NCBI GenBank assembly: GCA_964036045.1 | Contig: OZ038378.1 | Coordinates: 9,052,001-9,116,000, forward strand | Length of the DNA: 64,000 bases | Source: Eutreptiella sp. 'Long Island Sound 2002' | Lineage: Eukaryota > Protista > Euglenida | Direction: 5' to 3' | Shown here: positions 1 through 35,317 of the stretch, one piece after another | How positions within the stretch are numbered: the first letter of the stretch is position 1 | How the letters are laid out: each line of letters starts with the position of its first letter | Translations under genes and position numbers: made by a program | The notes under the pieces: generated by a model | The model's input: only the letters and a program-made list of their open reading frames with translations | The model's database searches: none | What the model was told of the DNA's origin: nothing

Positions 1-2602
1 CCTCCTCTTCCCGAACGTCGTACTTCTCTTCGGGCTTCAACTTCCGGAGTTCGCCATGCTCCTGAGCGTCTCGGCTCTTCTCTGGCTCCAATCTCCGGCG
101 TGGTCTCCACCGAGTCCACAATGCGCATCCGGGGCGTACTATGGCAGGGCTCATAAGGGCCCAAGTCCCCGCGTCGGCGGTAGGTAGGGGCAGCAGGTAC
201 GCCTCTGCTACCATAAAGAAGGTCCCTACCAGGACCGGCCCCTGCTGTGCCCCTTCCGCCTGTTACCCCGGCTGACTTGCTCCTGATCAGCGATTGCATT
301 TCTCAAAATTCAGGGTCCAAAATCCAAAAATATAGAAAATACAATCCTCCTTCAACCCTGAACAGCAACCAGATCCCACAAATACAGCAATAACCCAATC
401 CACACTGCGGGCTTCCGTTCAGCACACCGGTTGTCTCACGGTGGCGGGCATGTACAAGAATTGCACCAAAGAGGAAAGCCCTGAAATTGACATATGAACA
501 CAAATAAAGCAAAGTTGGGGAAAGATGGAAACATACACAATCATAGCCATAGACCCCTCATTCCCTGGACTCGAGACCTTCCCTTGACTCGCCAACATGA
601 TGCCCTGAACCCAGTCAAATAAGATGGTTAAATGCCATGTGTCAAAAGTCACTACAAAAACCCGAAAAATGTGTTCACTCCCAAGCCTCTAAATCCTAGC
701 CCAATAGGGGAGGTGGCGTGTCATGGCCTGGAGTGGCACTCAGGACCATGCCCTACCCTGACATAATCTTGGTTGGACTTGGAGTCGATTGGGCTTGGAG
801 AACTGCCCCATGAAGATGACCTCACACCATGGCAAAATCAGGCAAAACACACCATTATGCCAAAAAACCAATTATATACTCAAAAATGCACACGGCAAAT
901 ATTCAAATGCTCCATGCATGTGTCAAACCGGAAAGTAGTATACAAGGGTGATATAGACCAAAGGTCCATGCCCAAGAATATCCCATCATTGGCTCCGAAA
1001 CCCCTTCCGGTTATGTACATGACATGCTTCACAAGTCAGCTCATGACCTTGAGACCTAATTTTGTGAGACCTCGTGTGCCAAGCCAAAGTGACCACGCAA
1101 TCCGGCATATGGTGAGGTACAACACCCAAGCATATGCCAACATATCAGCAACATACCATGGTTCACAGATCTCTAGGCACTTTACTGTTAGCCGACCAGT
1201 TGAGCAAATAAAACACAAAAATGAGCATAAAATGAGGTCAAAAACATGCAAATAATGCCAAATTCAAGATAATTACAATAGTATATAACTTCGCTCACCC
1301 ATGGTATCAACATAAGATTCAAAGCACAATTGCTTGGGACCATTTGCAAACAATCCCCCCACTTGAATCCTCACATGGACGCATAGGGACACCTTCGAAC
1401 CTCCTCCCAACACGCACCATGAAAATGGGAAAATTGATAGTGGCGCTTGTGGGTTGCTTCGTAAGCCCTCCCACATGCACTATATGAGCGGTAGACTTAG
1501 TCTAGCGCCATGGAGTTCATCATTGGGACATGGGCAAAGCCCTTGCCACGTATGGCGCCATATATCTTCCTACAAACGGAGATATATAACATGGGCGTGA
1601 GCATATCGAAGCACATACCATGCATATAACACATACCCTCAAAACGTGGCTCCCAACATGATATGCCATGCCCCTCCATTGGCATAACTTCACGTTAAAA
1701 ATACGTAGGAACCCAAGGAAAGTTTCTATGCAACACCAACACTCATGCGGCACACTGGAAAGTTGCATTAAAATATTCGGTTGCACGGTCCAAGAGATAT
1801 ACATAACTTTCTACCCTCTTGACCATTATCCCTTGCTACACCGGGCATGTGTACACACCAAAGGCGTTTGATGCTTCCTAAATTAAGTTGAGACCAAGGC
1901 GGTTCCAACCCAATTCTCGAAATTGATATTCCCCGCCGTGAGCCGGAGATATGATTCTTCAAAGTGGCCTCACGAATCACTTTTGTTTCGACTATATCTC
2001 CAAGAGAAATAAGACAGACGACAAAACGAAGGATGATTCGTGATCGGGGATAACTGTAGGACCACTCGAGATTCATCATATCAAGTGCGGCGATGTCGAA
2101 GTCGAAAATCCGATTCCGAAAGTCTGAAAAAATCGGATTAATTTTGCGAGTGTATAATATGAAAATTGCGGAAGCAACGAACCCTTTACTGATGAAATCT
2201 GACCCTTCATCGGGGTTTCCGCCAAAATATCTGTAAATAACAGTTAACCAATCGGTTACCGCAGAATCGCGAGCCAACTGACAGTCGCCGATACATTGAC
2301 AATCAGAACGGAAGGCGGAAAAATTATGGAAACATTATGATAAAAAAACCCTGTTGATTCCTGATATTCTGATATATAAATCTCAGCTGGCGGCGCCTCG
2401 GTACTGAATATGGCCGCTCATAGCCGGAATGGCCAAACCTATCACACTATCACATCGGGTTAGGCCAGGTGGATGGGAGAGTATGATATCAGCCAATGGC
2501 GGCTTGCCGGCACATAGATACACACCCCAAGTGACCCCAAGATGGCCACGGGGGTCCGAACCGGCTTCACCACGATGCCCTTCGCGCTGGCACTCTTCAT
2601 CC

Positions 2603-2992
2603 TACAGAGTTGTCGATAAATGGCGCGATGCTATTTGTGAATATTTTTATGAGCACCATTCCTTTACCCCACAGTATGACGCTTTTGCTAATCGTGAGAA
2701 CAAACGGTTTGATAATTACTTTCGCGACGCTGGGACCCAAAAATGGGACAAGAAGTTATGGATTAATCCTCCGTTTCACTTAATCCAGCAAGTCATCCAC
2801 AAAATCAAGCAGGATAAAACCCAGGCGATTTTAGTTGTACCCTTGTGGGACGACAAGCAGTGGCTTCAGGAATTGCAGGACATTTGTGTAGATTACATCG
2901 AACTTCCCAGGAAAATTAAGCTGTACGCCAGAAACGACACAGGTCCCCTGCGACAGCGCTCCTGGAGTTCGCTCGCATTTCTGGTGGATGGA
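2603..2992 (+). CDS. Dam-like N6-adenine DNA methyltransferase domain inside the E1 polyprotein
   Basis: YDAFANRENKRF (DxFA-type motif), then LWINPPF at 2765-2776 (amino-MTase motif IV), then IQQVIHKI...AILVVPLW...W; same pattern as the MT domain of DIRS1-type retroelements and phage Dam-like enzymes. Followed by a Ser/Asp-rich linker and then RT. Confidence 0.85.
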
Positions 2993-3582
2993 GGGCTTCC
3001 TGACTGTGATTCTGCTGATTCTGGGACTGATTCTTGTGTTGGGTCAGAATCTGAGGTTGAGCGTGGTAGTGATGATGAATGTATTTTTTCCGATTTTTCT
3101 CCGTCAGATGCTGAAGGTGATCCGTCGTCAAATGGATCCGCCTCGTCTCCCTCTTCCCCAATACGATCGACATCGAAAGGAATCTTCAGTGCACGGGCAA
3201 ACAAAAATTTAAATCGCGCCGCAAATTCAGAGTTTTTTACGAAAAACCTCGTATGGAAGCTTTGAATGATCCTTTCGAGGAGCTGGATCACAAAGATAAT
3301 CTCTGGAATGCCGGTACTTGACCCACCTACCTCCAAGAGGCAGTTGATACGGACCTTTTCGAGACATCCGTAAGAAGATTCTTCCTGCTAAGGCGGAGGA
3401 GATTGCCAGAGTTTTTTCCACAATTATTCCTGGTGATCAGGTGGACACTGAGTTGTGTTCCAGGAAAAGAGAAAACCTTTTCGAGGGACAGAAGGACACA
3501 ACCCTTTCCGGCAAGTTAGTCAAGAACCCCCCGGTCCGTGGGCAGTTCGGTGAAGCCTTCATCCAGCTTCGTGAGGGGTAAA

Positions 3583-4940
3583 AGGCGAAGAAACAGCGCC
3601 CCTATGAGAACCATGGACAAAAACATGAAATTCTCAGAAAAATAATTGAAAGAAATCTCAGGGAATTTGGTTGGCTTGAGGGTTGTATGACCAGCGAGTG
3701 GTGCTGTGAAACCATTTACAGTTCCGAAGATCCACCTGCAGACCAAAACACCATAGATGGTTGGCGAATGGTTGTTGATTTTTGCAATCTTAACGCTGAA
3801 ACGAAGGCAGATTTGCACCCCCTTCCCCTCATTTAGGAGGAAATCGCCAAGAGGGCAAGAAGTGGTTTGTTTTCTGTGCTGGATCTCCGTCACGGCTTTC
3901 ACCAAACGCCGTTGAGGAAGGACAGCCGGCCTCTAACTGGTATGTGCACCCCATGTGGCCCGGTCCAGTGGACGGTCATGCCCGTGGGACTGAAGAATCC
4001 GCCCTCATTCTTTCAGAGAATGATGGAGGACGTGCTTTTTACAGCTCATCCTGAGCTTCGTGCCTTCGTCAGTGTGTACATAGATGATATAATCATCGCG
4101 ACGGAAGGGGAAGGACTGACTGAAGAGGAGTTGGTGGCCCCACATGAAAAGCAGCTGAACCAGGTAATGGACATCCTTGATGCCAATCAGCTGATTTGTA
4201 GGCCGAAGAAGGGAAAATCGTTTTCAAAAACTGTCGAATTTTGTGGTTCTCTTCTCGAGAATGGTACACGCCGACCCAGTCCAGGGAAGCTTGTAGCTAT
4301 TCAGAAGTGGAAGCCCCCTGAGACTATTACGGAATTGGGAGGATTCCTCGGTTGTTGCAATTTTTACCACACATTTGTGCCGAATTATGCCAAATTCGCC
4401 GCCCTCCTCACTCAATGATTGAAAGTAGGGAGAGATGCCGGCAAGGCAGGTTCAAAGGTGGCTATCAAGTGGACTGATGAATGCGAGGAGGCCTTCCATC
4501 ACTTGAAGGCGGCCCTCTGCGAAGTCGCCACGTTGCATGTGCCAAAATTCGACAAACCCTTCTACATAAGAACCGACGCATCCAGGTACGCGATCATAGC
4601 TGTTCCTGAAGAGGTTTATGAAGCCACCGGCGATCATTACCCTCATGCATTTTGGTCTCGGAAGCTAGCCCCACGCCAAATGCAATGGTCGCCACGTGAG
4701 CAAGAAACATATGCCATAATCTGCGCTCTGAAAAAGTATCAATCGTGGGTTGGCACCAATCGAGTCGAGGTCCTGACGGAACATCGGTCTCTTGAACATT
4801 GGGCCGCCGAACACATTGATACGGTTTCGGGCCCAGCTGGTCGACGGGCCAGATGCCACGAATTTCTCAGTCTGTTTGACCTCCATGTGTCTTATTTACC
4901 TGGAAAACACAACACGGTAGCGGATGCTCTGAGCCGATGG
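3583..4940 (+). pseudogene. E1 reverse transcriptase and RNase H (internal stops)
   Basis: QRPYE...WRMVVDF...VLDLRHGFHQ...QWTVMPVG...YIDDIII...VEFCG; RNase H YIRTDAS (4563) to ADALSR; stops at about 3836 and 4416. Confidence 0.93.
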
Positions 4941-5539
4941 GCTTACCCCGCGTCGGAGGGGCTGCAAAGTACCAACATCCATGGTACGGTGCAGGACTGC
5001 CAGGTCGTAATCGAGTGGGATCAAGAAGAAAAAAGGCTCATTCGACGTGAATGCATGCAATGTTCTGTTAAACGGCTTGCATTACCGTGTCATGACATCA
5101 CGGCCTTCTCAGATCCGGCGCATGCTCATGAAATTATCACCAAATCACTGAAAGTCGTGGAGAAAGTCACGGATCTCTCTTCCGGGAGTGTGAAACGGAC
5201 AAAGTACACCCGGCCTGTAAGTAGATTTCAGTTGATTCAGGGCATTAAGCGCCGAGACCCGGCCAAATCTCCACCCCTGCCCACAGATTCTCTCATCATC
5301 CGTCACTGGACCAACGATTATATCGGTGATTCCATGTTTTTGAATGTTCTTAACCGCATCAACTTGTTCTGGGGCTGACGTCCCCCAAGCGGGTGATTCC
5401 ATGTTTAAAGAGGTCTTTGAGAACTTAAAATCCAAAGATGCTCACAAAGATGGAATTTATTCCGAATATTCATTGGATGGGGGGAAACTGTGGATGGAGG
5501 GTAAATTGTGCGTGCCAGACGCCCTGGCCCCTCGAGTGT

Positions 5540-6820
5540 TAAACTGGTGGCACAAATGGGAGTCCCCCCACGCACATGGCGGTAGATTATGGTCGATGAT
5601 TAAAGATAGGTTATGTGGCTCTAGGCTCTACACTCATTGCATGAGAGTAGCTGCCGGATGTGCCCAATGTGCTGTCTCAACGCCCCTCGGCACCAAGAAG
5701 CACGGCCATCTGAAGCCACATCCTATTCCGGAGCGCCTCTTTAACAGAGTCAGCAGTGATTTCTTCTATCTCGGTGACCTCAATGACGAAGATTGCCATT
5801 GGACTAATAAAAAGGTCAATGGTGTGCTCCTTATTCAGTCGCTCATTCTGGCTACATTCAGGTGTTGCCTTGTAACATAGAGTCAATGACTGGCAAAGCT
5901 GCCGCCAAATGGTGCGCGCAGACATGGATGGGAGGTTGGGACATCCCATCCGAGGTGATTACGGACTCAGGTAAGGAGTATACCTCCGAATGGTGGAGAG
6001 AATTATGTACCCGCCTTGGAATCCATCACCTCAGGTGTGAAATTCACTCACATGGAGCGCTGCCAGGCGAAAGAGCCGGGCGCTCACTTATAAATATGTT
6101 TCGTAAGGAACTCGCCAGTGAGAAAGACTTCCATTGGCTTGAGATTCTTTTTGCCTTGCTTTGCCGCTACCACGACACGCCTTTGTATCATGGCCTTTCT
6201 CCAAATGAAATTGTCTTTCGACGAAAGAAGTGTTGGTGGAACATGCCGCTGAATAACCCTCGCCCCGGTAAAGGTGCTTCGCTGTTTATGGATGAAATCC
6301 AAAGGGCAAAAAAAACTGTCTCTAAATTAATTGATAAGCATCAGGCTGACTGGCTCTGGGTCCAGAATCAGTGCCGAAAAAGCCCACACAATTTTCAAGT
6401 GGACGATCGAGTTTGGCTTCGAAAATCCGAAACCACTCTGGACAGAGATGATAAGCTTCTTCCCTTGTGGGAGGGGCCATTTGCTGTTACAGCCCGTCTA
6501 GGGGAAGACAGGTGGAAGATCCGTGTGGATGTCAACAGGGAAATCGAAGTTTCCAGCGACCGCCTCAAGAGAGAAATCCCTTCCCCCAAGGAGAGAGTTA
6601 AACCTCTTTTTCCGACCTCGAAATTTCTATCGGATTGGGTCATCGAAGGGGGGAAGTACGAACTCAAGAGGATTCGCGAGGCACAGCGTGACGAAAAAGG
6701 CGAATGGAAGTTTTTGTTTGAGTGGAGGGGCTTTGATTCGAGTCACAACAACTGGGAACCAGCCGATTCTTTCGTGCATGGATACACCAAGGGGTTCATT
6801 GACTTCCTCAAGAAGCACCC
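5540..6820 (+). pseudogene. E1 integrase with GPF motif and C-terminal chromodomain (6657-6773)
   Basis: WWHKWESPHAHG...CAQC zinc finger; D-D-E residues; WEGPF; YELKRIREAQRDEKGEWKFLFEWRGFDSSHNNWEP chromodomain pattern; frameshift near 5860-5880. Confidence 0.9.
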
Positions 6821-8617
6821 CGAAATTGGTGTACTCCTGACGGATTGTCTGTCCAGACCAGACAGACAGGTTGAGGAAGACGTAAAAAGACCCGTGATAA
6901 ATCGAGATCCAGCCTTTTATGGCCCTCATTCGTCACATTCCAGGGTTGATCTGCCAATCCCCCCTCCTGCGGTCAGGCCAGCCCAGGAATCACATGAGGA
7001 CCGAGCTTCCAGTTCTGCTGCTGATTTACAGCGCCCAAGCCGTACCCGTGCCCGACCAGACAGGTTGGTGGTCAGATGCATTCGTGCTTGGCCGAATTCA
7101 GGAAGGCATCCCAAGACTTGAGTCGCCGGCGCCCTAAATTGGCTAACAGTCGTCTAGTGCAGGGCGTCATGGCACTCGTCGATAGGGCTCAAGGGTGTAG
7201 GTTCGAGACCCTTGCATGTCCAACTCCTTCCAAAGCTCCAGCCTCGCTCCGTCGACCACTTATTACAATGTGAGTGTTCTGACGGACTGAAAAAATTGCA
7301 TTCTGCTTAATCCACGCTTCATTCTTGTTGATTACGACTTGATGTGGAGAATTGAGAATGTTTGAGAATTTGACGTCAATCAACGTTTCTTTGGTTTCCA
7401 TTAGGCAGACGAAGCGTAGAAACACTACCGGAGCCCAAGGAGTGTGCTGCCGTGTCCAGAAAAAACCAAACTCAGGCTTAGTTCAGGCAGATTCGGGGTA
7501 ATCTTGTCTCTGTTGGTCTGTGCACTTTCCAAAATTTGGCTACTCGTGCAGATGGAAGCAATTGTACATACTAAAACGCTGCGCAGCGACTTTCACCCCT
7601 ACAGGTACCCCCTGTAGTTCTGGCCGCACCAGTTGCAACGCCAGGGACTCAGATCTCACCTTCATCTGTCTTGATGCTGAAGCCAAAGTCCAGATTCAGG
7701 CACAGGATCCTCAACTTTACCCTGAATTTCTCAGGTTTGTCCTTCATTCTGCCATTGTTGCACGAAACCCCGATGTCAATTGTTCAGACAACCTTCAGAC
7801 AGAGGCTCTAGGGACTTCTAACAGCAACCTCTGAGGTCCGTAAGCTTCGATGTATTTTTGGCACACGCCAATGTGAGCGAAATCCCTCAGTTTCAGGTCA
7901 AGAATGGTGAATCCAAGTGTCTTGTGGGACTCAGTCGAAAGATTGGCCTTGCCCAAGTTGATTGATACCGCCGCCACTGTACATAAAGGACTATTCGGTG
8001 TCTTTCAGTTATATACTGTCAGTAAAGGGCCTCTCGCTATCCTTCGGCGCGTTACATGCCAAGGATTCAGGGCCATCATGTCCCGTCATGATGCATCATC
8101 ATCAGACCAACATTTTCCTGGAATCTCTTGGATGCTTGGGAACAAACGTGCCGGAAAGGATAATTGAGCTGAACGAACGACCTTATATATTGACCTAAGT
8201 CTAAACGAAGGCAGTAGTCGTTTCGGTTCCAGACATTCCGCATCATTTCGCCTTAATCCACAGAGATTTCTACATGCTAGGAAAATTTAGGATAATTTAC
8301 TTGTCATCTCCTTTCATTCCTTTAGGATCTGCTTAAGGCCTAGCCTAACCATGTTAACGCTTATGTTTTTCTGTTCTCTTAGGACCTGGAAACTACGTTG
8401 GTCCTTGTGTCCTCTCTCTCTCTTCACGTCCGTTGGACTGTTCGTCAGTCCTCATTCTGCATCATTCCAGGTTCATTCATCGCCATTTGGTGCCAATTCA
8501 GCCCAAATCAGATCAGATTGAGCAGATGTTGCCTCGTCAAGAGTACATTTCTTTTTTTTTGGGACTTACCCGCACTACGTTCTTCGTTGACCTAGGGACA
8601 CACCCCAGTGTGTTTTT

Positions 8618-8989
8618 GGAGAGGGAGTGTAAGTGCGGCTAACCCACATCTGCTGAGAATTTCACAGATCTGCCCCAGATTGGCTACATTTTGGCCATTT
8701 TACATACTTCGTCGCTACCGCCGACCCCCAGACCATTCCCAGGGACTGAACTATATAACTCTGACGTGCCGGATTCAGCGCTGCTGTCCATTCATTGTAA
8801 ATCCGCCGCGTTCCGATGATTTGCCCGGAATCGCCATTTGCCGCTGGTGCGGGTGCGCGACCCAAATCGGCCATACGTTTTTTCAAAATCGGATTTATAT
8901 AAATCTTTTCAGACAGATTCAGACACTCAGATGTATTTGTGTTCATCTGCATTACTTTTCTTCATAGACTGGGATTTTTCTCTTGGTCA
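8618..8989 (+). repeat. Putative polypurine tract (8618-8627) plus candidate 3' LTR of E1 (TG...CA, about 362 bp)
   Basis: GGAGAGGGAG immediately followed by TGTAAG; candidate end TTGGTCA at 8989. No second copy in the window to confirm the boundaries. Confidence 0.4.
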
Positions 8990-9497
8990 TATGAGCATGG
9001 ACTTGTCTAGTGTTCTCGCTGCCCTCTCCTCCCCTATGGTCCCCTCGGTCACCGGAACAATCAATCAGGTCGCATCCCCGCACGGCTGCCTCCCGGGCCT
9101 AGCCGGCCCTGAGCCCTCCGGCCCTCTCATCAACCCCGGACAGCACTTGCACAAAGATGGACGAGGAGGCCCTGACCGCAGGCCAAACAAGGACAAGAAC
9201 GCGAACCAGTCCGGAGGGAATCCCAATACTACGCCAGGGGGGAACTCTAAGCCTTCTGGTGGGCAATCAAACACGGGACCTACGACCCGTTCCCAGGCGC
9301 AAGCCCAACAAGAACAAGGGACTACGCGTGCCAAGGAAGATGGGGACCAGTCACACGCCCGCAAACGCCCCCGTTTCATGCGCATGGCGCGGAAACTGCA
9401 GAAGAAGGGGTTTGAAGTGACCTGCCCCGCGGAGTTCTGACAGGGACGCTCCGGGGGTTCTACAGATCTGGTGTTCGGGCTACTTATCCGTCTTGGG

Positions 9498-9800
9498 GGA
9501 CGTGAAAACCTGGGGGTACTGGATACTGGGGCCACTATATCTATTGTGGCCAAGAAAAGTTTACCTCAGGGGGACCTGAAGAACATCATGCCTACCGCAG
9601 CCATCCGCATGGGGGATGGGCATGTGGTGCACAGTTCTGGGGACTGTGAGGTCAAAGTGCCTATGGGATCTAGGAGCACTGCCCATCGGTTCTACGTGAT
9701 GGACACCGAAGCCTTCGACTTTGTCCTGGGGACCGACTTCTTCGTCGAGCACTCCCAGATTCTATCCCTCACCCTGCAAGCACCCTACGTCCTCCAAGTC
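9498..9800 (+). CDS. Retroviral-type aspartic protease of E2
   Basis: LGVLDTGATISIV (Asp codon at 9522) and DFVLGTDFF C-terminal motif. Confidence 0.9.
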
Positions 9801-9917
9801 GACCATGGTGACGGATGGGAATCTGTACCTCTGGAGCAGTCCGAACACACGTCTAGCTACCTGAGGGTATGCAAGCAGGAGGCCTCAACCATGATGGTCG
9901 CCTCCAAAACTGAGGAC

Positions 9918-10334
9918 TAACAGCTCCTTGGGGATGTCTTGGATCAAGGTCTAAAAGAGTTGGGATACTCCCGAGAAGACCTGAAAGTGCGGCTATTTCC
10001 CAGCGACAAGCAACATATCCTGGACCTCTACTGCAGCAAAGGGAAAAATTGCTGCTATAAATTTTACTGGCCCTCTTTCGGGATGGCCTACGGGAACCCA
10101 AGATTCAGTGAACTGGGGAAGGTCCTGACCAAGGTGGCCCTGGAACGTTCCCGTATGATCCTGTGCTTTCCCGATTGGGGAGCCCATGGGGGAAATGAGT
10201 ACCGGCGTACTCTATTGGACAAGCTGACGCTCACCTCCATGCAGCTGCCGGATGACGCCATCTACGTGCCTCTGGGCCGCAAGACGCCAATCCGGAGACC
10301 TGGATGGGGGAGCATACTAAGCGTGCTGGACGGG
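9918..10334 (+). CDS. Divergent Dam-like adenine methyltransferase domain of E2, between protease and RT
   Basis: VRLFPSDKQH / AYGNPRFSELGKVLTKVALERSRMILCFPDW / LPDDAIY...PIRRPGWGSILSVLDG aligns by eye with the E1 domain (LWINPPF...IHKI...ILVVPLW / LPRKIKLY...PLRQRSWSSLAFLVDG); NPRF at 10095-10106. Confidence 0.75.
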
Positions 10335-13300
10335 AGCCTAGCCCCAGTGCCCTGGGAAGATCCAGACCCTGCTATGGTCCAGGAAATTCAACGTGAGAGC
10401 AGCGGTTACACCCTGGATGTCCTGAAAAATCAACTACGACCTCGAGTCGCCGTAGAGACTACTCTTGGGGGAGACGAGTACGTGGTGTCTGACACTGTTG
10501 CCCCCAGCTCCCCCTGCCGTGTACCTAATCCTGATGTAGTCTCAGAGTGTGGGCTATCCGAGCTACCCAGCTCTATACACTCTGATGACGAGATTGAGCA
10601 TGACGCCTTCTTTGTGCAGACGTGCGTGGGGGAAGTGGAGAACGCCGAGTACGCTACCCCACTGAAACCCCTACTCTCCATGAGGGGAGAGGAGCCCCTG
10701 GACGAGGAGCTGGATCACCGATCCACGCTGAGAGAGTACCTGGACTCCAAGAGGAGATTGGTGGTGAAAACGCTATGCTACGCTAGGCCTACCCGCCGCT
10801 CCTGGCCGGTGAAGCAATGGTCTATGGGAGATATCTCCCAACTGAAGGAGGACCTCGAACAGAAAATTACCACCTGGCAAAGAGAGGTGGATCTGAAGCT
10901 CATGAAGAGCGTGTGGGGTGCCCATGTGAGGACCCCGGAGGAGGATGAACTCTCAGAGGAATGCGTATGCGAGCCCCCTCGAGTGTGCCCATGTTGTCAC
11001 CGTCCACCTGAGACTGTGGAACAGGACCTTCTCTACGCCTACCAAGGGCTGAAGGATACGACCAAGGACGCTGAGCCGGTTGAGGACCACCTCCCCGCTT
11101 CTATACACCAAGGGGCAAGCAATCTACACTCTGACGAGGACATGGAGGACAAGATCAAACTCTTGGACCCTAGAGTACAGAAGCTGATCAGGACCTATCT
11201 GGAGGTATTCGGAGAACTACCCCCTCCAGCCTCCTGTGACAAGCTGGTACAGATGGACCTCAAGCTGAAGCCCGAGTTCGTGGGTCACAAGATACGTAGG
11301 AGACCCTACCCGGCTCCAGAAGAGCAGGCCGCTGAGATGGAGTGACAGATACAAGAATGTATCGACGCTGGTCTGGTCCTGGAGTACAAGGATGGGGACT
11401 ACCCCCAACACTGCAGCCCCTGTTTCCTGGTGGCTAAGCCTGGGTCTACAGCCAAACGGCTGGTAGTGGACTATGGAGAGCTGAACAAGAAGACACTGAA
11501 CCACTCAGGGTCCATTCCTAACATGGAGTCAACCCTCAAGAAGATAGCCTCCTGCCGCGACAAGACGAAGATGGACAAGCGGAGTGGATTCTGGCAAGTG
11601 CACCTGACGCCCAATGCCCAGGAACTCCTAGCCTTCATCACCCCTCAGGGGAGGGTGTTCAAGTGGAAGGTCATGCCCTTTGGCGTGGCTAACGCACCCG
11701 CTCTTTTTCAAGAGCTCATGAACGAGATGCTATCCATCCTATGTCGGAGACGTGTGGTGCAACAACTCATATCCCGGGGCGCGCAGATGGAAGCACACAT
11801 CGAGGACGTATGTCTGGGAACGAATACCCAAGAGGACCACCTCATCCTCTTGGGCGAGTTCTTTGCAGTCTGCCAGGAGAACCACACCAGACTCAAGCTG
11901 GAGAAGTGTCAGTTCATGCAGGAGACTATGCAGTACTTGGGGTTCGACATTGGCTATGGGTGGTGGACCCCAGCGGCCTCTAAGGCCAAACCCCTGATGG
12001 ATGCTAAGGTACGACATGAAGACCCCAAGAAAGGACTCCATGATGTACGCAGTTTGATTGGTGCCTGCAACTTCTACCGCTGCCACATCAAAAATTTCAT
12101 TTACACCAGCGCCATCGTGACGGATCTCATCAAGAAGAGTACTACCTGGCGCTGGGGCCCTCAAGAACAACAAGCGTTTGACGAGCTCCAGGACAAAATG
12201 GCCAACGCTAAGTGCTTGAACGTGCCTAGAGCACAAGGGGAAATTATCTTGGTGACTGACGCCAGCAATGTGGGCGCAGGTGGGACGTTGTTCCAGTGGC
12301 AAGCACTAGAGAAGGAGGAGTTCGACTCGGCCATTTCCCAATGAGGTACTGATGGACTAAACCGAGACGGTACTCTCAAGCACAGCTACCCTGACGACAA
12401 AGGGGTCGTGGTTCCCCTGGGTCATTGGAACTGGAAATGGAACTAGGCCCGGGGTAACTATTCTACCTATGAGCAGGAACTGCTCGCGGGTATGCTAGTG
12501 CTATCCTCTTAGTCCCGATTGTTGGGGAGTAACCCAGTGGTTTGGCTGTGTGACCAAGAACCGGTCCGCACCTTCCAGAAGGGACCCCCACCTGAGAAGG
12601 CTAAGCTCAGACGCTGGTGGACCTATCTGAGCCAGCTACGGCTCTCAGTACATCATATTGAGGGCGTCAAGAAGGAGTGTGCGGATTACATCAGCCGCAA
12701 CAAATTTGACGACATGATTGGTGCCAGGTCTGAGGAGCTAGCCAAGGAGGCATTCAGCTGTATGGATGTACACCTGGACCTCAACATGACCATGATCAGA
12801 CCGGTAGATGGACTCCGACAAGCGGAGTACCTAAAAGATTTTGGGGACATCTACAAACGCCTGCAGAAGCGTCTGGAACCTGCCCTGGTCAACCAGGAGC
12901 AGTGGAAGCGGGACAAGACCTACCTCTGGCATGAGGACCAGATAGTCGTGCCTAACGATCTTATCCCGGCACTCCTCAAGTGGACCCATGAGTCCAGTGG
13001 TCATGTGGGAGCGAACCGTACCCTGAGGCTGTTCAAGCAGTGGTTCCACTCTACGTGGACGGACGATCAGCTGCGGAAAACCCTCCAGCCCATCGTGGAC
13101 AAGTGCCCGTGTCGGTCCTGTAAACCTGGGGATATCAGGGACAGAGGTCTCTATTCGACGCTCCCTATCCTGCACTGTGCCAACAATGTTCTCTACGTGG
13201 ACTACATGGAGATGCCTAAGTTTGGGGGCTATGACGTTGCCCTAGTGGTAACCTTGGGCTGACCAAGTTTACCAGGGTGTTCCCATGCACTAAACACATC

Positions 13301-14182
13301 ACCGGCGAGGAGACCATCAAGATACTCCTGGAAGAGTGGTTCTGTGTCTATGGGGCACCCAAAGAGATTAACTCAGACAAGGACGTCCGAGTACGCTCCG
13401 ACACTGGCTGGTGCAAGAGAGTCCTGAGGTCCCTCAACGTCCAATTGTCAACGGGGATTCCCTATACTCATACGAGTAACCCCCTATGTGAGCGACAGAT
13501 TCGAGTTCTCAAAGAGAACGTGAGGATATGGTGCAAGACAGAGCGCACCAAAGACTGGCTGAGACTACTCCCTGTCATATCCTTGATGATGAACTCCCAA
13601 GAGAGTTCGTCAACTGGCTATTCGCCCCATGAGCTGTTCATGGGACGCCCGGCGTGGTTCCTACACGCTCCCTATCCTGAGGATTCCTACTCCACTGTGG
13701 CTAAGTGGGTGAAGGAGCAACAAGACAAGGTGGACAAGGCCAAGGCTACACTCCAGAGAGTGAGGGAGCGCCAGTGGAACAAGAAGAACAAGCACCGGGT
13801 GCCAGCCTCCTACCAAGAGGGAGACTGGGTGCTGGTGCACCACCGTCTGCTACCCGCCTGGCCACGCTTCACCAGCGATGACCCCTACTTTGGGCCCTAC
13901 AAGATCCTCTCTGTGGATGGTTACCGCATCACCGTGCAGTGTTCTCCCCGACTAGGGGGGACCCTGGTGTGCGCTGCTCAACAGCTCAAGCGCTACTACG
14001 ACCCAAAGGAGCTCTGTGGGGAAGAATGGGAACTAAACGACGAGGAGATCGCCGCTCTGGACCTACAGGGCGCTGCCAGCCCGATGGAGGTTGAAGGAGA
14101 ACTCCCCGACATGACTGCCGCGGAGATGGCTAAGGAAGCCTTCTACCTGGTGGAATCGGTTATCCGACGCCGCTATCGCCAA

Positions 14183-15047
14183 TGACAGGGATTCAGGGGG
14201 GTCCTCGTGAATTTGAGCGGCACCGAAATTTTCGAACTTCAGACATTTTTTTTTAAAATCCTTCAAGATTTCTGAAAATCAATCAGTCTCAGGCCGATTC
14301 CATCTCTTTCTCACCAGATCTCCAACGCCCTCCTGGACCCTGACAAACACGAAGGCAAAGTTGGTGTTCTTTTCACACAATTCATTCAAGTCCACTCTTG
14401 CTCCACGTTGGTCGTTGTACAAATGATTCTGAGAGCCTTGCCACAGCCTCAGCACGCTCCATGGTGCAGGAGTGTTCCTGCACCTCGCCGCTGCTCTACA
14501 TGTCTGAAAATAGCAAATACAAATGCACTGACGGATCAAAATACATGTCTACCGAGTTAAAAAGTTAATAGTTAAAAGGCTGGGTAATTTTCAAACCCCT
14601 GCTCTGCTTAGTGATAAGGCGGTTATTGGATACACTCGGCGTTTGAAACACTGTGGAAGGCGTCCTACGGCGACGCTGATTTCACTTCAATTGAATTCCA
14701 AATTTCAGATCCAAACCTAAAATTCAACTATCGCCGTAACATAAAATCCACGTATCGTTACTTCAGACTTGTCGTAAAATTGATAAATCCATGTCTAAAT
14801 CCACTTGACTCGCAAAGAATAAAACTATTTCAAGATAAAAAATGCAGAACACGCGCGCGATGCCGACACTGCACCGGCTGCGCTCTCAGACTGAACACAC
14901 CACAACTGAGCCAGAAAACAAAACAATCAGGAGTCAAGCGGGTCGCTTCAGTAACTGTAAACAATAGAACAGTAACGTGAGTACTTTCAGTACCGAACAG
15001 AGCCTAGGATGAATCTGCGTATGGACAACAAGACCCCATACGCGTCA
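14183..15047 (-). repeat. LTR copy (865 bp)
   Basis: TGAC...CGCGTCA termini; about 20 substitutions versus the 16196 copy counted by eye. Confidence 0.9.
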
Positions 15048-15267
15048 CCACCCTCCCTAAGAGGTTATCACTGTGGTTAGAAAATCTCTGAACACAAAGG
15101 GAGGACCTAGGCTCGGTGGTCTCGACACACACAGAATGAATTTCAAAAGTAGAGCGCCACTCTAAACAGGACGCTGAGATAACGTGCACGGCGGGGCGAT
15201 GCAGGTTGTGTACCAATCATGGGTTCAGTGAGCGTGTAACGTGAAAATAGAAGCAAATACAAAAGGC

Positions 15268-15400
15268 AGCGCGTAGCTTGCCACACACTGCAGCGCAAAG
15301 CATGCAGGTAACACAGCGCGAAGCTTGCCATACACTGCAGCGCAAAGCATGCAGGTAACGCAGCGCAAAGCTTGCAGAAGAGGCAGCGCGAAGCTTGCCA
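15268..15400 (+). repeat. About 45-bp imperfect tandem repeat (GCAGCGCGAAGCTTGCCATACACTGCAGCGCAAAGCATGCAGGTAAC-like), also at about 17281-17413
   Basis: Two full units plus partial units are directly visible in each internal region. Confidence 0.75.
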
Positions 15401-15445
15401 TACATTCCGAGTAACTAAAATTTCCCAACATCTACAGAGCAATGA

Positions 15446-15943
15446 TTAATTATCCGATAAATCAAAACACCTCGAGAGGCGGTAACGGCTTGACGCTGGC
15501 GGCGGTTGATGGCGATGAGCGTGCGGGCTGCCTTCGTGTGCTTGGGCGGAGCGAACACGCCTTAGCTGGCGTTGGGCTGCTTTGCGGCGTCCACTGTTGT
15601 TGGCCTCGTCATCGCTGCTGCTCTCAGCCTTTGGCGTTCTGGAGATTGCCCGGAACTGCCTGGGCGTCCGCGGCAGCCATTGGCGGTTGGATGCTGCACG
15701 CCTCCCACACGTGGTTCTGCCGTCGCTGCTGCTATCGCTGCTGAGCTGCAGCTGGCGGCTGCGACTCCAGTCCTCACTGACGCTCCTCTGGTTGTGCCAG
15801 GCGCGGCGCTCAGCATCCCATTGCGCGTACTGGGCTTCTGGGTCGTTGCTGCGGATCTTGAAGTCACTGGCGCTGGTGTCGAGCTCACTGGTGGACAGAG
15901 GGTTTGACTGCAGTCCCTCTAGGTGGTCCATCCAGGCTTCCAT
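15446..15943 (-). CDS. 165-aa Ser/Arg-rich ORF in internal unit 1 (second copy at 17459-17956); unknown, possibly a gag remnant
   Basis: ORF open in both internal copies; overlaps an upstream acidic ORF (MEVYIGGIDVTDDEG..., ending at 15919 / 17932). No recognisable domain. Confidence 0.3.
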   Translation of the reverse strand: MEAWMDHLEGLQSNPLSTSELDTSASDFKIRSNDPEAQYAQWDAERRAWHNQRSVSEDWSRSRQLQLSSDSSSDGRTTCGRRAASNRQWLPRTPRQFRAISRTPKAESSSDDEANNSGRRKAAQRQLRRVRSAQAHEGSPHAHRHQPPPASSRYRLSRCFDLSDN

Positions 15944-16195
15944 CCATGGGGGCGTCCGAGGTCCTCTCCAGCTGTCACTGCTGCTCCGGCGTCCGATTCC
16001 TTCGCTGCTGCTGCTGGGGCACTGTCCAAAACCCAGCGGCTGTGATCTTGGTAGCTGCTGCTGCTGCCCTCGTCGTCCGTCACGTCTATGCCGCCGATGT
16101 ACACCTCCATGGGATGCTCTGCAGTGACAGGGGCCGGCGTCGCGAGGCGGTCAGGGGCTGGCACGGCAATAATGCCTGCTTTTTCAGAATTATTT

Positions 16196-17060
16196 TGACG
16201 CGGATTCAGGGGGGTCCTCGTGAATTTGAGCGGCACCGAAATTTTCGAACTTCAGACATTTTTTTTTAAAATCCTTCGAGATTTCTGAAAATCCTTCAGT
16301 CTCAGGCCGATTCCATCTCTTTCTCACCAGATCTCCAACACCCTCCTGGACCTTGACAAACACGAAGGCAAAGTTGGTGTTCTTTTCACTCAATTCATTC
16401 AAGTCCACTCTTGCTCCACGTTGGTCGTTGTACAAATGATTCTGAGAGCCTTGCCACAGCCTCAGCACGCTCCATGGTGCAGGAGTGTTCTTGCACCTCG
16501 CCGCTGCTCTACATGTCTGGAAATAGCAAACACAAATGCACTGACGGATCAAAATACATGTCTACCGAGTTAAAAAGTTAATAGTTAAAAGGCTGGGTAA
16601 TTTTCAAACCCCTGCTCTGCTTAGTGATAAGGCGGTTATTGGATACACTCGGCGTTTGATACACTGTGGAAGGCGTCCTACGGCGACGCTCATTTCACTT
16701 CAATTGAATTCCAAATTTCAGATCCAAACCTAAAATTCAACTATCGCCGTAACATAAAATCCACGTATCGTTACTTCAGACTTGTCGTAAAATTGATAAA
16801 TTTATGTCTAAATCCACTTGAATCGCAAAGAATAAAACTATTTCAAGATAAAAAATGCAGAACACGCGCGCGATGCCGACACTGCACCGGCTGCGCTCTC
16901 AGACTGAACACATCACAACTGAGCCAGAAAACAAAACAATCAGGAGTCAAGCGGGTCGTTTCAGTAACTGTAAACAATAGAACAGTAACGTGAGTACTTT
17001 CAGTACCGAACAGAGCCTAGGACGAATCTGCGTATGGACAACAAGACCCCATACGCGTCA
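16196..17060 (-). repeat. Central shared LTR copy (865 bp)
   Basis: Perfect 7-bp terminal inverted repeats TGACGCG / CGCGTCA. Confidence 0.9.
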
Positions 17061-18208
17061 CCACCCTCCCTGTGAGGTTATCACTGTGGTTAGAAAACCT
17101 CTGAACACAAAGGGAGGACCTAGGCTCGGTGGTCTGGACACACATAGAACGAATTTGAAAAGTAGAGCGCCACTCTAAACAGGACGCTGGGATAACGTGC
17201 ACGGCGGGGCAATGCACGTTGTGTACCAATCATGGGTTCAGTGAGCGTGTAACGTAAAAGTAGAAGCAAATACAAAAGGCAGCGCGTAGCTTGCCACACA
17301 CTGCAGCGCAAAGCATGCAGGTACCACAGCGCGAAGCTTGCCATACACTGCAGCGCAAAGCATGCAGGTAACGCAGCGCAAAGCTTGCAGAAGAGGCAGC
17401 GCGAAGCTTGCCATACATTCCGAGTAACTAAAATTTCCCAACATCTACAGAGCAATAATTAATTATCCGATAAATCAAAACACCTCGAGAGGCGGTAACG
17501 GCTTGACGCTGGCGGGGGTTGATGGCGATGAGCGTGCGGGCTGCCTTCGTGTGCTTGGGCGGAGCGAACACGCCTTGGCTGGCGTTGGGCTGCTTTGCGG
17601 CGTCCACTGTTGTTGGCCTCGTCATCGCTGCTGCTCTCAGCCTTTGGCGTTCTGGAGATTGCCCGGAACTGCCTGGGCGTCCGCGGCAGCCATTGGCGGT
17701 TTGATGCTGCACGCCACCCACACGTGGTTCTGCCGTCGCTGCTGCTATCGCTGCTGAGCTGCAGCTGGCGGCTGCGACTCCAGTCCTCACTGACGCTCCT
17801 CTGGTTGTGCCAGGTGCGGCGCTCAGCATCCCATTGCGCGTACTGGGCTTCTGGGTCGTTGCTGCGGATCTCGAAGTCACTGGCGCTGGTGTCGAGCTCA
17901 CTGGTGGACAGAGGGTTTGACTGCAGTCCCTCTAGGTGGTCCATCCAGGCTTCCATCCATGGGGGCGTCCGAGGTCCTCTCCAGCTGTCACTGCTGCTCC
18001 GGCGTCCGATTCCTTCGCTGCTGCTGCTGGGGCACTGTCCAAAACCCAGCGGCTGTGATCTTGGTAGCTGCTGCTGCTGTCCTCGTCGTCCGTCACGTCT
18101 ATGCCGCCGATGTACACCTCCATGGGCTGCTCTGCAGTCACAGGGGCCGGCGTCGCGAGGCGGTCAGGGGCTGGCACGGCAATAATGCCTGCTTTTTCAG
18201 AATTATTT

Positions 18209-21982: not shown

Positions 21983-22075
21983 GCTTAGCAATCCTAGTGG
22001 TCTGCACCCTAGGGGGCTGTGGCACCTCTTTTGGAGAGGTCCTGGGTTCAGTTCCCAGTCAGCCTAGCTAAGTAG
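21983..22075 (+). repeat. Degenerate tRNA-derived (SINE-head-like) fragment
   Basis: GAGGTCCTGGGTTCAGTTCCCAG (22036-22058) resembles a tRNA T-arm/B-box, with an A-box-like TAGTGG about 40 nt upstream; no full cloverleaf. Confidence 0.3.
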
Positions 22076-22260
22076 GAAGATCCCATCTGACATGGCAGTG
22101 ACCTCAGCGCCACAAGCCATGCCACCTCAGCACCTATGGGACCCAAAACAAAGAGTGCACATCTCTAGATTGCACTATAAAAGAGAGGATGCCCATGTGG
22201 GCAGTTTTCACATGATTGTAGGATATTTTCTAACTATCTTTTCTTAACTCTGTAGTTATT

Positions 22261-35257: not shown

Positions 35258-35317
35258 TGCGTCCTTGAAGAAAACATCGAAATGGTGCCACAACGTGACT
35301 AGCACTTGTCTCCACAA

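What the first reader, a model, noticed from the sequence alone, without database searches (positions are those of the whole stretch)
2603..2992. Ty3/gypsy chromovirus-like retrotransposon carrying a Dam-like N6-adenine methyltransferase in its polyprotein
Seen: the first ORF of E1 has YDAFANREN...LWINPPF...ILVVPLW, then a Ser/Asp linker, then RT-RH-IN-chromodomain. Established: NPPF/NPPY is the catalytic motif IV of amino-MTases; a domain with this pattern is known in DIRS1-type tyrosine-recombinase retroelements (there after RNase H), and C5-cytosine MTases are known cargo in dinoflagellate and charophyte retrotransposons. I am not aware of integrase-type gypsy elements with an adenine MTase ahead of RT. 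Inference: the element may methylate its own cDNA or target site (self-marking, evasion of silencing, or 6mA-linked transcription), pairing a writer with a chromodomain reader in one polyprotein.
Basis: partly seen in the sequence, partly recalled or inferred. Interest (0 to 1): 0.92.

Follow-up and report, generated by a model that had tools for sequence, protein, structure and literature searches.

The report
Retrotransposon remnant carrying a Dam-like methyltransferase
The flagged stretch is a real phage-Dam-like adenine-methyltransferase domain in a dead, 5'-truncated Ty3/gypsy retrotransposon copy; this kind of element ("DAM-LTR") was described in a May 2026 preprint, so this is a new example, not a new kind.

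Summary
Window 2603-2995 encodes a ~130-residue domain with DAF and NPPF motifs. It matches Pfam Dam weakly on its own but clearly as a family. A confident model (pLDDT 93) matches small phage N6-adenine methyltransferases (TM 0.70-0.76). RT, RNase H, integrase and a chromodomain follow.

The copy (E1, 2570-9151) is 5'-truncated and its pol is broken. The ATG at 2429 and the first 47 codons belong to an unrelated repeat. A near-intact relative (L001) has gag, pro-Dam and pol in three frames, each -1 from the last. In-phase slippery heptamers sit at the Dam/pol overlap.

A second element next door (E2, 9160-22209) carries a divergent homologous domain with NPRF instead of NPPF. Both domains evolve under purifying selection (dN/dS 0.15-0.17, similar to RT). 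Both families have hundreds to thousands of copies in one unidentified eukaryote.

Ty3/gypsy elements with a Dam domain were already described in bioRxiv 10.64898/2026.05.21.726589, which also proposed the self-marking 6mA model and found no activity in E. coli.

What is new here is a new member of that kind, the conserved NPRF variant, the three-frame layout and an unsampled host.

The parts
2429..2569 (+). Non-element leader of the ORF: the ATG and first 47 codons lie in an unrelated dispersed repeat (window 713-2570)
   Evidence: blastn: window 713-2570 = L002:141-1974 at 88.6%. Family homology to L001 starts at 2570. tblastn of the L001 pro-Dam ORF starts at its residue 195.
2570..9151 (+). 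E1: 5'-truncated copy of a DAM-LTR (Ty3/gypsy, chromodomain) element. It lacks the 5' LTR, gag and the N-terminal half of the pro-Dam ORF.
   Evidence: Collinear blastn to L001:10589-17267 at 77-90% identity. The L001 element is 6501-17271 with 508-bp LTRs 99.6% identical.
2570..3265 (+). Remaining C-terminal part of the pro-Dam ORF (equals residues 195-427 of the 428-aa ORF of L001). No stop or frameshift inside.
   Evidence: tblastn 88% identity, 233 residues, no stops.
2603..2995 (+). Dam-like N6-adenine-methyltransferase domain (DAF motif, NPPF motif IV, VVPxW strand)
   Evidence: Pfam PF05869 E 4.1e-05 / 8.8e-06. AF2 pLDDT 93, pTM 0.88. Foldseek against phage Dam: E 3.4e-09, TM 0.74. PDB top hit is the CAPAM/PCIF1 adenosine-N6 MTase, E 3.1e-04. 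dN/dS 0.17 against L001.
3014..3265 (+). Ser/Asp/Glu-rich linker and tail of the Dam ORF, overlapping the start of the pol frame
   Evidence: Translation. dN/dS 0.37 against L001.
3205..3214 (+). Two overlapping in-phase slippery heptamers (A AAU UUA / U UUA AAU) in the Dam-ORF/pol overlap: candidate -1 frameshift site
   Evidence: Same heptamers at L001:11224-11233 in the same phase. The overlap is 96% identical between E1 and L001, against 89.6% overall. Downstream structure inconclusive.
3253..6946 (+). pol (RT - RNase H - integrase zinc finger - integrase core - SH3-like - chromodomain), broken: 4 frameshifts and about 6 in-frame stops relative to the 1210-aa pol ORF of L001
   Evidence: tblastn counts. 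Pfam on the single-frame pieces. The family's pol (L001) is closest to Ty3 among solved structures.
3723..4247 (+). Reverse transcriptase domain
   Evidence: Pfam RVT_1 E 2.9e-19 on the piece 3867-4415. Bounds mapped from L001 pol residues 158-332.
4470..4874 (+). RNase H domain
   Evidence: Pfam RT_RNaseH_2 3.6e-25 and RT_RNaseH 5.8e-18.
5512..6050 (+). Integrase zinc-binding and catalytic core (DDE, rve type)
   Evidence: Pfam Integrase_H2C2 (0.077) and rve (1.5e-05). Stronger in relatives.
6657..6770 (+). Chromodomain at the integrase C-terminus
   Evidence: Pfam Chromo E 3.9e-04, 20.7 bits, below the 25.1 cut-off. 32.7 bits in subfamily locus L004.
8660..9151 (+). 3' LTR of E1
   Evidence: blastn to both LTRs of L001 (73-77%). 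The end reads ..CACTTGCA, matching the L001 LTR end ..CACTTTCA.
9160..22209 (+). E2: second, distantly related DAM-LTR copy. It is 5'-truncated. Its pol has 2 frameshifts and 4 stops, there is 1 further stop in the stretch matching the relative's Dam-like ORF, and it is interrupted by one large insertion. A partial 3' LTR lies at its end.
   Evidence: Collinear blastn to L002:9274-17155 at 72-84%. The L002 element is 6169-17449 with 787-bp LTRs 97% identical. Break counts.
9471..9920 (+). E2 aspartic protease
   Evidence: Pfam RVP E 4.8e-05.
9975..10391 (+). E2 Dam-like domain, divergent: ELF in place of DAF and NPRF in place of NPPF
   Evidence: blastp to the E1 domain E 9e-06. Profile A4 E 3.6e-09. 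hhalign of the family profiles: probability 97.5%, E 6.4e-12 over 143 columns. No Pfam hit on its own. NPRF in 95 of 120 relatives and NPPF in none. dN/dS 0.15.

Best explanation
Shown: window 2570-9151 is a dead, 5'-truncated copy of an LTR retrotransposon of the Ty3/gypsy type. Its C-terminal chromodomain is typical of chromoviruses. The family encodes, between protease and reverse transcriptase, a compact domain of about 135 residues with the fold and catalytic motif (NPPF) of small phage Dam N6-adenine methyltransferases. This is a member of the recently described DAM-LTR retrotransposons. In a near-intact relative from the same genome (L001), the genes lie in three frames, each -1 from the previous: gag, then pro-Dam, then RT-RNase H-integrase-chromodomain. 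In-phase slippery heptamers sit at the end of the Dam ORF. The domain is kept by hundreds of copies and evolves under purifying selection as strong as that on RT, RNase H and integrase. So it serves the element's own propagation.

Inferred: the domain is made as part of Gag-Pro-Dam, and after frameshifting as Gag-Pro-Dam-Pol, so it travels into the particle. There it most likely transfers a methyl group to adenine N6 on the element's replication intermediate (cDNA or RNA:DNA hybrid). New insertions would then start out carrying 6mA, a mark of permissive chromatin, while the chromodomain steers integration. This is the model of the 2026 preprint. Methyl transfer itself has not been shown for any such element.
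For: Identity of the domain:
- Pfam Dam hit on this copy.
- 37 of 46 relatives hit Dam, best 2.6e-12.
- AF2 pLDDT 93.
- 28 BFVD matches at E<=1e-3, led by phage 'DNA N-6-adenine-methyltransferase' with TM 0.70-0.76.
- PDB matches are all Rossmann-fold methyltransferases, led by the NPPF enzyme CAPAM/PCIF1.
- Invariant or near-invariant D35, F37, W57, W62, N64, P65, P66, W91 in 46 diverse relatives.
- Motif IV is NPP[FYW] in 101 of 126 covered representatives.

Element type:
- L001's pol is closest to Ty3, with rve integrase and chromodomain.
- LTR pairs in L001 and L002, and a TGG-starting primer-binding-like site after the 5' LTR.

Fixed family feature:
- 56 and 477 protein clusters, some with 204, 266 and 1049 members.
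- The same Dam-then-RT or PR-then-Dam order in unrelated environmental contigs: P0200, P0213, P0218, P0224, P0239/L006.

Selection: dN/dS is 0.17 for Dam, against RT 0.10, RNase H 0.24 and IN 0.10.

Layout.

Published context: DAM-LTRs show more 6mA-methylated insertions than other LTRs in two ichthyosporeans and in Euglena, and higher expression in the two ichthyosporeans but not in Euglena.
Against: - No methyl transfer has been demonstrated. The preprint's expression of DIRS, DAM-LTR and adintovirus Dam domains in dam-deficient E. coli gave no rise in 6mA.
- The neighbouring E2 family keeps a homologous domain under equally strong purifying selection, although its motif IV is NPRF. That form was absent from all 126 covered representatives.
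- The host genome is CpG-depleted (o/e 0.64), which suggests a 5mC-rich setting. Whether the host has 6mA or AMT1 at all is unknown.
- The protease of the E1 family is not recognised by Pfam.
- No downstream frameshift-stimulating structure is supported.
- This window's copy is itself inert.
Confidence: 0.5

Rival explanations
1. The Dam-like domain is retained for a role that does not need methyl transfer. For example, it could bind nucleic acid or S-adenosylmethionine, recruit the host's own adenine methyltransferase, or act as a structural spacer in the Gag-Pro-Pol precursor. It would be a pseudo-enzyme, in the way METTL14 supports METTL3 (own knowledge).
For: The E2 family has NPRF instead of NPPF in 95 of 120 relatives and never NPPF, yet dN/dS is 0.15, like its RT (0.12) and protease (0.12). 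Heterologous assays reported in the preprint were negative, and the preprint itself raises recruitment of host AMT1 as an option.
Against: In the E1 family and in 101 of 126 covered representatives, the full catalytic motif NPP[FYW] and the acidic-x-Phe motif are conserved. That is hard to explain without catalysis. The fold is complete relative to stand-alone 130-180-residue phage enzymes (TM normalised to target 0.5-0.77). Negative E. coli assays have several trivial explanations.
Confidence: 0.25
2. The domain methylates adenine in RNA rather than DNA. The target could be the element's own transcript (cap-adjacent or internal adenosine) or the RNA strand of the replication hybrid, affecting stability, translation or packaging.
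For: The best solved-structure matches are RNA adenine-N6 enzymes. These are CAPAM/PCIF1, which also uses NPPF (E 3.1e-04, TM 0.55-0.59), and then KsgA/Dim1. Giant-virus PCIF1-like proteins also appear in the viral fold search. No DNA methylation was seen in E. coli.
Against: Phage DNA Dam enzymes match much better than CAPAM: E 3e-09 and TM 0.74, against 3e-04 and 0.55. Sequence membership is in Pfam Dam. The PDB simply lacks a close PF05869 structure, so the CAPAM ranking may reflect only library content. Published DAM-LTR copies carry more DNA 6mA.
Confidence: 0.1
3. The domain is a one-off chance fusion of this copy with a fragment of a DIRS element or of a phage or bacterial gene, or a contaminant. 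It is not part of the element.
For: The ORF start at 2429 is indeed chimeric with an unrelated repeat.
Against: The Dam segment is collinear with the same segment in a near-intact LTR-flanked relative (L001) and in divergent subfamily copies of the family (L003, L004). It has hundreds of copies, is under purifying selection, and recurs in the same position in other organisms' elements. No tyrosine recombinase is present, and the domain sits before RT, not after RNase H as in DIRS.
Confidence: 0.01

Closest known systems
DAM-LTR retrotransposons (Fernandez-Moreno et al., bioRxiv 10.64898/2026.05.21.726589, May 2026), especially the chromodomain-bearing 'DAM-chromovirus-like' type
   Same: A Ty3/gypsy-type LTR element with DDE integrase and chromodomain carries a prokaryote-like Dam domain with a conserved Asn-Pro-Pro pocket. 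Copy numbers reach hundreds to thousands in a single host. The predicted fold of a central sheet flanked by helices agrees.
   Different: The host is unidentified and apparently unsampled: every close relative comes from one ENA assembly. I could not assign the elements to any of the five named lineages. No cytosine methyltransferase is appended, so they are not an 'EpiLTR'. Two deeply diverged DAM-LTR families lie side by side, and one has NPRF fixed in place of NPPF, whereas the preprint describes the triplet as Asn-Pro-Pro in almost all cases. The gag / pro-Dam / pol three-frame layout is not described in the parts of the preprint I read (abstract, introduction, results, discussion, methods).
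Methyltransferase (MT/Dam) domain of DIRS1-like tyrosine-recombinase retrotransposons (Goodwin and Poulter 2004; Piednoel et al. 2011, PMC3266345)
   Same: The same Pfam family (PF05869-like) and the same acidic-x-Phe-Ala and NPPF motifs. According to the preprint, DIRS is the source from which LTR elements captured the domain.
   Different: DIRS elements place the domain after RT/RNase H and use a tyrosine recombinase. Here the domain precedes RT, follows the protease, and the element has an rve integrase, LTRs and a chromodomain.
Small phage DNA N6-adenine methyltransferases of Pfam PF05869 (Dam)
   Same: Fold match at TM 0.70-0.76 over nearly the whole length of 130-215-residue phage proteins. 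Motif IV is of the (D/N)PP(Y/F) type.
   Different: Sequence identity is only 15-22%. This copy scores below Pfam's cut-off. The domain is embedded in a retroelement polyprotein rather than standing alone. Activity is unproven.
CAPAM/PCIF1 cap-specific adenosine-N6 methyltransferase (PDB 6irz and related)
   Same: Best solved-structure match. Rossmann-type core and an NPPF catalytic motif (motif from own knowledge).
   Different: The match is weak (E 3e-04, TM 0.55, 15% identity). CAPAM is a large RNA enzyme with extra domains. It probably ranks first only because no PF05869 structure is in the PDB.
Retrotransposons carrying cytosine-5 methyltransferases (de Mendoza et al. 2018, as cited in the preprint)
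   Same: The same principle: a retroelement carries its own DNA-modification writer.
   Different: A different enzyme class and mark (5mC against 6mA), a different position in the element, and different hosts.

Membership tests
Ty3/gypsy (Metaviridae) LTR retrotransposon | Pol domain order PR-RT-RNase H-IN with a DDE (rve) integrase | tested here: met
   RT, RNase H, integrase zinc finger and rve in that order in the window. The same in L001, L002 and P0200. PR is confirmed by Pfam only in the E2 family.
Ty3/gypsy (Metaviridae) LTR retrotransposon | RT most similar to Ty3-type RTs | tested here: met
   Among solved structures, Ty3 Gag-Pol 7q5b scores E 1.8e-61 and Ty3 RT 4ol8 scores 5.5e-55 against L001's pol. 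Retroviral RTs score 1e-24 or weaker. No RT phylogeny was done.
Ty3/gypsy (Metaviridae) LTR retrotransposon | Flanking long terminal repeats, with a primer-binding site and a polypurine tract | tested here: inconclusive
   The window copy has only a 3' LTR (8660-9151). Full pairs are present in the relatives L001 (508 bp, 99.6%) and L002 (787 bp, 97%). A TGGTAGCA.. site follows the 5' LTR, and L002 has a G-rich tract before its 3' LTR. No tRNA match or target-site duplication was established.
Chromovirus | Chromodomain at the integrase C-terminus | tested here: met
   Pfam Chromo E 3.9e-04 in the window, below cut-off. 32.7 bits, above cut-off, in subfamily locus L004. Weak in L001 and L002.
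Chromovirus | RT/IN phylogenetic placement inside the chromovirus clade | not tested
Dam, Pfam PF05869 (DNA N6-adenine methyltransferase) | Score at or above the family's curated cut-off (28.1 bits) | tested here: inconclusive
   This copy scores 23.7 bits (ORF) and 25.9 bits (domain), both below cut-off. The relatives P0200, P0213, P0235, P0239, P0218 and P0224 score above it. 37 of 46 relatives hit at E<=1e-3. The E2 domain has no Pfam hit but links to the family at 97.5% hhalign probability.
Dam, Pfam PF05869 (DNA N6-adenine methyltransferase) | Catalytic motif IV (D/N)-P-P-(Y/F/W) | tested here: met
   NPPF in E1. NPPF in 31 of 48 covered E1-family hits and NPP[FYW] in 101 of 126 covered representatives. 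Not met in E2, which has NPRF.
Dam, Pfam PF05869 (DNA N6-adenine methyltransferase) | Rossmann-type methyltransferase fold like the phage enzymes | tested here: met
   AF2 pLDDT 93. Foldseek BFVD E 3.4e-09, TM 0.74. PDB hits are all class I methyltransferases.
Dam, Pfam PF05869 (DNA N6-adenine methyltransferase) | Transfers a methyl group to adenine N6 in DNA | not testable with these tools
   The only published test of such eukaryotic domains, in E. coli, was negative.
DAM-LTR (preprint 10.64898/2026.05.21.726589) | Dam domain encoded within, or next to, an RT-bearing LTR element with a non-DIRS integrase | tested here: met
DAM-LTR (preprint 10.64898/2026.05.21.726589) | Placement in one of the five named lineages (Chlorophyta chromovirus-like, Chloro-Ochrophyta, Ichthyosporea, Pyropia, Euglena) | not testable with these tools
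   The preprint's sequences are not held, and the host of the window is unknown. No close relative exists in Logan, NCBI or JGI data.
DIRS1-like retrotransposon | Tyrosine recombinase instead of a DDE integrase, and the MT domain after RT/RNase H | tested here: not met
   An rve integrase is present and no tyrosine-recombinase (Phage_integrase) match was returned. The Dam domain lies upstream of RT.

The most novel reading that the evidence does not exclude
The NPRF (E2) lineage shows that the Dam module of LTR retrotransposons can be kept, in over a thousand copies and under strong purifying selection, without a canonical catalytic motif. It does so in a CpG-depleted genome of a host outside those surveyed so far. 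If so, the benefit of the module is not, or not only, 6mA deposition on DNA. It could be a binding or recruiting module, or an enzyme acting on RNA or RNA:DNA hybrids. The proposed link between DAM-LTR success and host 6mA/AMT1 would then need revision.
Probability: 0.2. Interest if true: 0.65.

Novelty: new member of a known kind. Interest (0 to 1): 0.4.

Why it matters
Retrotransposons that carry their own DNA-modification writer bear directly on how mobile elements exploit host epigenomes. The kind is now on record as a 2026 preprint, so this window does not open the question. It does add useful material:
- Two deeply diverged DAM-LTR families side by side in one very repeat-rich, CpG-depleted genome of an unsampled eukaryote.
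- A natural contrast between a canonical NPPF family and a fixed NPRF family, both under selection. Existing long-read modification data could compare them.
- A gene layout that puts the domain in the protease ORF, upstream of a candidate -1 frameshift site. That implies it is made in excess over RT and integrase and is packaged with Gag-Pro.

Tried and rejected
- Sequence searches against the PDB, with the single ORF and with a 46-sequence profile, found nothing. Only the fold comparison was informative.
- The first structure prediction used 13 close relatives and was poor (pLDDT 61), so I did not use it. The second used 46 diverse relatives and gave pLDDT 93.
- Rfam found no RNA family in the window.
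- Host identification failed. No rRNA or tRNA clue turned up. No Pfam-recognisable host gene appeared among 20 further long ORFs of the window. The only host-gene fragment seen is a GTP-type PEPCK exon in L004, which does not discriminate. The accession numbers are in no paper of the library.
- Euglena gracilis was considered as host. It is disfavoured because no Logan, NCBI or JGI protein clusters with these families. This is inference, not proof.
- The protease of the E1 family was not confirmed by Pfam or by blastp to the E2 protease. It rests only on position and a D-N-G-S / LGHPWL pattern.
- No canonical slippery heptamer was found in the gag/pro overlap of L001.
- A downstream stimulatory structure at the Dam/pol overlap was not supported: z -2.7 in E1 but +0.7 in L001.
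- No target-site duplication was recognised at L001.
- Between-subfamily dS is saturated, so only the E1-L001 and E2-L002 pairs give usable dN/dS.
Full report
**1. Observation**

It has ..YDAFANREN.., then ..LWINPPF.., then ..ILVVPLW.., then a Ser/Asp/Glu-rich tail. Downstream pieces, in several frames, hit Pfam RVT_1 (2.9e-19), RT_RNaseH_2 (3.6e-25), Integrase_H2C2 (weak), rve (1.5e-05), SH3_Tf2-1 (weak) and Chromo (3.9e-04). The ORF itself hits Pfam Dam PF05869 at E 4.1e-05, 23.7 bits, below the curated 28.1. The domain alone gives 8.8e-06 and 25.9 bits.

**2. Anatomy of the window copy**

- blastn against a near-intact relative from the same assembly (L001, fetched through protein P0003) shows collinear homology from window 2570 to 9151.
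- The L001 element is 10.8 kb (6501-17271) with 508-bp LTRs that are 99.6% identical.
- Window 2570 corresponds to residue 195 of L001's 428-aa ORF. So E1 lacks the 5' LTR, gag and the first half of that ORF.
- Upstream, window 713-2570 is an unrelated dispersed repeat, 88.6% identical to L002:141-1974. The ATG at 2429 and the first 47 codons are therefore a chance extension.
- E1 ends with a 3' LTR at 8660-9151.
- Relative to L001's 1210-aa pol ORF, E1's pol has 4 frameshifts and about 6 in-frame stops. The Dam segment has none.

**3. Layout of the family**

- In L001 three long open frames follow one another, each -1 from the previous. They are gag (about 797 codons), a frame ending with the Dam domain (one in-frame stop in this copy), and pol (1255 codons open; RT, RNase H, integrase, SH3-like, chromodomain).
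- Several members of the P0003 cluster (204 members at 90% identity or more) have the same 428-aa ORF length. The ORF end is therefore a family feature.
- The Dam/pol overlap contains two in-phase slippery heptamers, A AAU UUA and U UUA AAU, at L001:11224-11233 and window 3205-3214.
- The overlap is 96% identical between the two copies, against 89.6% overall.
- A downstream stimulatory structure is not supported.
- In two other subfamily loci (L003, L004) the next ORF is in the same frame as the Dam ORF.
- The protease expected upstream of Dam is confirmed by Pfam in the E2 family only. In the E1 family it is inferred from position and a weak motif.

**4. Is it a Dam-like methyltransferase?**

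- A profile of 13 family members, searched against 1.84 billion representatives, found 2249 proteins at E<=1e-3 and 233 at E<=1e-10.
- Of 46 diverse relatives, 37 hit Pfam Dam, the best at 2.6e-12.
- D35, F37, W57, W62, N64, P65, P66 and W91 (domain numbering) are invariant or nearly so.
- With that alignment AlphaFold2 gives pLDDT 93.0 and pTM 0.88.
- Foldseek against predicted viral structures returns 28 matches at E<=1e-3. Phage 'DNA N-6-adenine-methyltransferase' proteins of 130-215 residues lead the list (E down to 3.4e-09, TM 0.70-0.76 on the query, 0.5-0.77 on the target).
- Against the PDB the best matches are CAPAM/PCIF1 (E 3.1e-04, TM 0.55-0.59), then KsgA/Dim1, TrmI and DOT1L. All are Rossmann-type methyltransferases, and the first ones are adenine-N6 enzymes.
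- There is no sequence-level PDB relative.

The refutation condition 'no Rossmann amino-methyltransferase match or fold' is not met. The domain is a complete small Dam-type fold.

**5. Is it a fixed, selected part of the element?**

- The word-indexed search found 56 clusters for the E1 domain, all from one ENA assembly (ERZ25074135, contigs of 0.04-5 Mb).
- Nei-Gojobori estimates for E1 against L001 give dN/dS 0.17 for the Dam domain, 0.37 for the linker, 0.10 for RT, 0.24 for RNase H and 0.10 for integrase-chromodomain.
- Between subfamilies (L003, L004) dS is saturated while dN is 0.27-0.36.
- Outside this genome the same order recurs. P0200 (1448 aa) has Dam-RT-RNase H-integrase in one ORF. 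P0218 has protease-Dam. P0213, P0224 and P0239 have Dam-RT. L006 has Dam-RT followed by RT-RNase H-integrase-chromodomain. P0221 has integrase-Dam-RVT_2, which is the copia order.

The 'chance fusion' and 'neutral evolution' refutation conditions are not met.

**6. The neighbour**

- Directly after E1's LTR, window 9160-22209 is a second element, E2. It is collinear with L002:9274-17155. The L002 element is 11.3 kb with 787-bp LTRs 97% identical.
- E2 is also 5'-truncated. Its pol has 2 frameshifts and 4 stops. There is one further stop in the stretch that matches L002's Dam-like ORF, and E2 carries one large insertion.
- After its protease (Pfam RVP), E2 encodes a domain homologous to E1's: blastp 9e-06, profile 3.6e-09, hhalign probability 97.5% and E 6.4e-12 over 143 columns. 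Identity is only about 24%.
- The domain has ELF for DAF and NPRF for NPPF.
- NPRF is present in 95 of 120 listed relatives and NPPF in none. By contrast, none of 126 covered representatives of the wider family has NPRF.
- The E2 family is larger: 477 clusters, with single clusters of 1049 and 266 members.
- Its Dam-like domain has dN/dS 0.15, against RT 0.12 and protease 0.12.
- The pols of the two families share only about 24% identity, so these are old, separate lineages with the same PR-Dam-RT order.

**7. What is known**

A full-text search found bioRxiv 10.64898/2026.05.21.726589 (Fernandez-Moreno et al., 22 May 2026). It reports:
- about 10,000 eukaryotic Dam-domain proteins, most of them TE-borne;
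- the first Dam domains in non-DIRS LTR elements ('DAM-LTRs');
- chromodomain-bearing LTR elements as 30.9% of DAM-TEs;
- at least four captures from DIRS elements and five named lineages;
- a conserved Asn-Pro-Pro pocket;
- a five-strand sheet with flanking helices;
- no 6mA gain on expression in dam-deficient E. coli;
- more 6mA-methylated insertions for DAM-LTRs in two ichthyosporeans and in Euglena, and higher expression in the two ichthyosporeans only;
- the model that the enzyme marks the reverse-transcription intermediate so that host AMT1 maintains 6mA.

A further search found no earlier report of a Dam domain in gypsy elements.

**8. Host**

The host is unknown. Every close relative comes from the single ENA assembly. 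No Logan, NCBI or JGI protein falls in the same 50% clusters. This suggests, by inference, a species not otherwise sequenced and therefore probably not among those screened in the preprint (EukProt v3). The clues are CpG o/e 0.64 with TpG and CpA excess, a GTP-type PEPCK exon in L004, and a very repeat-rich genome.

**9. Mechanism and confidence**

- Shown: the identity of the domain, its place in the element, its selection, and the frame layout.
- Inferred: expression as Gag-Pro-Dam and, by -1 frameshifting, Gag-Pro-Dam-Pol; packaging; and adenine-N6 methylation of the replication intermediate.
- Confidence is high that the region is a DAM-LTR remnant (about 0.95). It is moderate that the domain works as an adenine methyltransferase on the element's own nucleic acid (about 0.5).
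- The NPRF family under selection keeps a non-catalytic or recruiting role alive as the main rival (0.25). An RNA substrate is a lesser rival (0.1).

The script printed tblastn segment bounds with their frames for the broken pol of E1. The script printed open-frame intervals of L001. Approximate places of frame changes or of a stop can be inferred from these outputs. I did not use them beyond counting, did not copy them into notes or this report, and later scripts printed counts only. The consensus lines printed by the alignment tools were not used.

Noticed in passing
window 14183-19076: A 2013-bp unit repeated in tandem about 2.4 times (units 96-98% identical), lying inside element E2. It has no match in loci L001-L006 and no long ORF. 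Its origin is unknown.
   Followed up: partly
window 713-2570: A dispersed repeat that abuts the truncated 5' end of E1. It is 88.6% identical to L002:141-1974. Part of it is also in L001:18834-19595 (minus strand) and L003:3770-4552, near a copia-type RVT_2 gene in L001.
   Followed up: partly
window 22818-25837 (- strand): Two long overlapping ORFs (547 and 522 aa), the second with RVT_1 (E 3.1e-23). This is another retroelement just beyond E2's partial 3' LTR. Its type was not determined.
   Followed up: no
window 55784-55972 and 63580-63768: A 189-nt direct repeat, 95% identical, 7.8 kb apart. It may be the LTR pair of a further element. ORFs between the repeats had no Pfam hits.
   Followed up: no
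window 49115-49197 and 50675-51293: A minisatellite with a 31-nt period (about 11-12 units, 60-88% identical).
   Followed up: no
whole window: CpG is depleted (observed/expected 0.64) with TpG 1.32 and CpA 1.25. TpA is also low (0.61). This is consistent with cytosine methylation in the host. E1 is less depleted (0.79) than E2 and the rest of the window (0.59-0.60).
   Followed up: partly
window 33635-35317 (- strand): A 560-aa ORF with no Pfam match. Several other ORFs of 140-270 aa between 26 and 64 kb also have none. No host gene was recognised anywhere in the window.
   Followed up: partly
L004:17778-18089: An exon-like ORF matching GTP-dependent PEPCK (E 3.8e-15 to chicken mitochondrial PEPCK, E 8.9e-14 to a further bacterial-length PEPCK entry). 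It is the only host-gene clue found near any copy.
   Followed up: partly
L006:6260-11076 and 14927-18389: An environmental scaffold (ENA ERZ28614740) carries two head-to-head copies of another Dam-RT / RT-RNase H-integrase-chromodomain element. Pfam Dam scores above cut-off there (39.7 bits).
   Followed up: partly
protein P0221 (JGI/IMG, 1114 aa): An integrase - Dam - RVT_2 order, so a copia-type element with a Dam domain between integrase and RT. This matches the 'Chloro-Ochrophyta' architecture described in the preprint.
   Followed up: no
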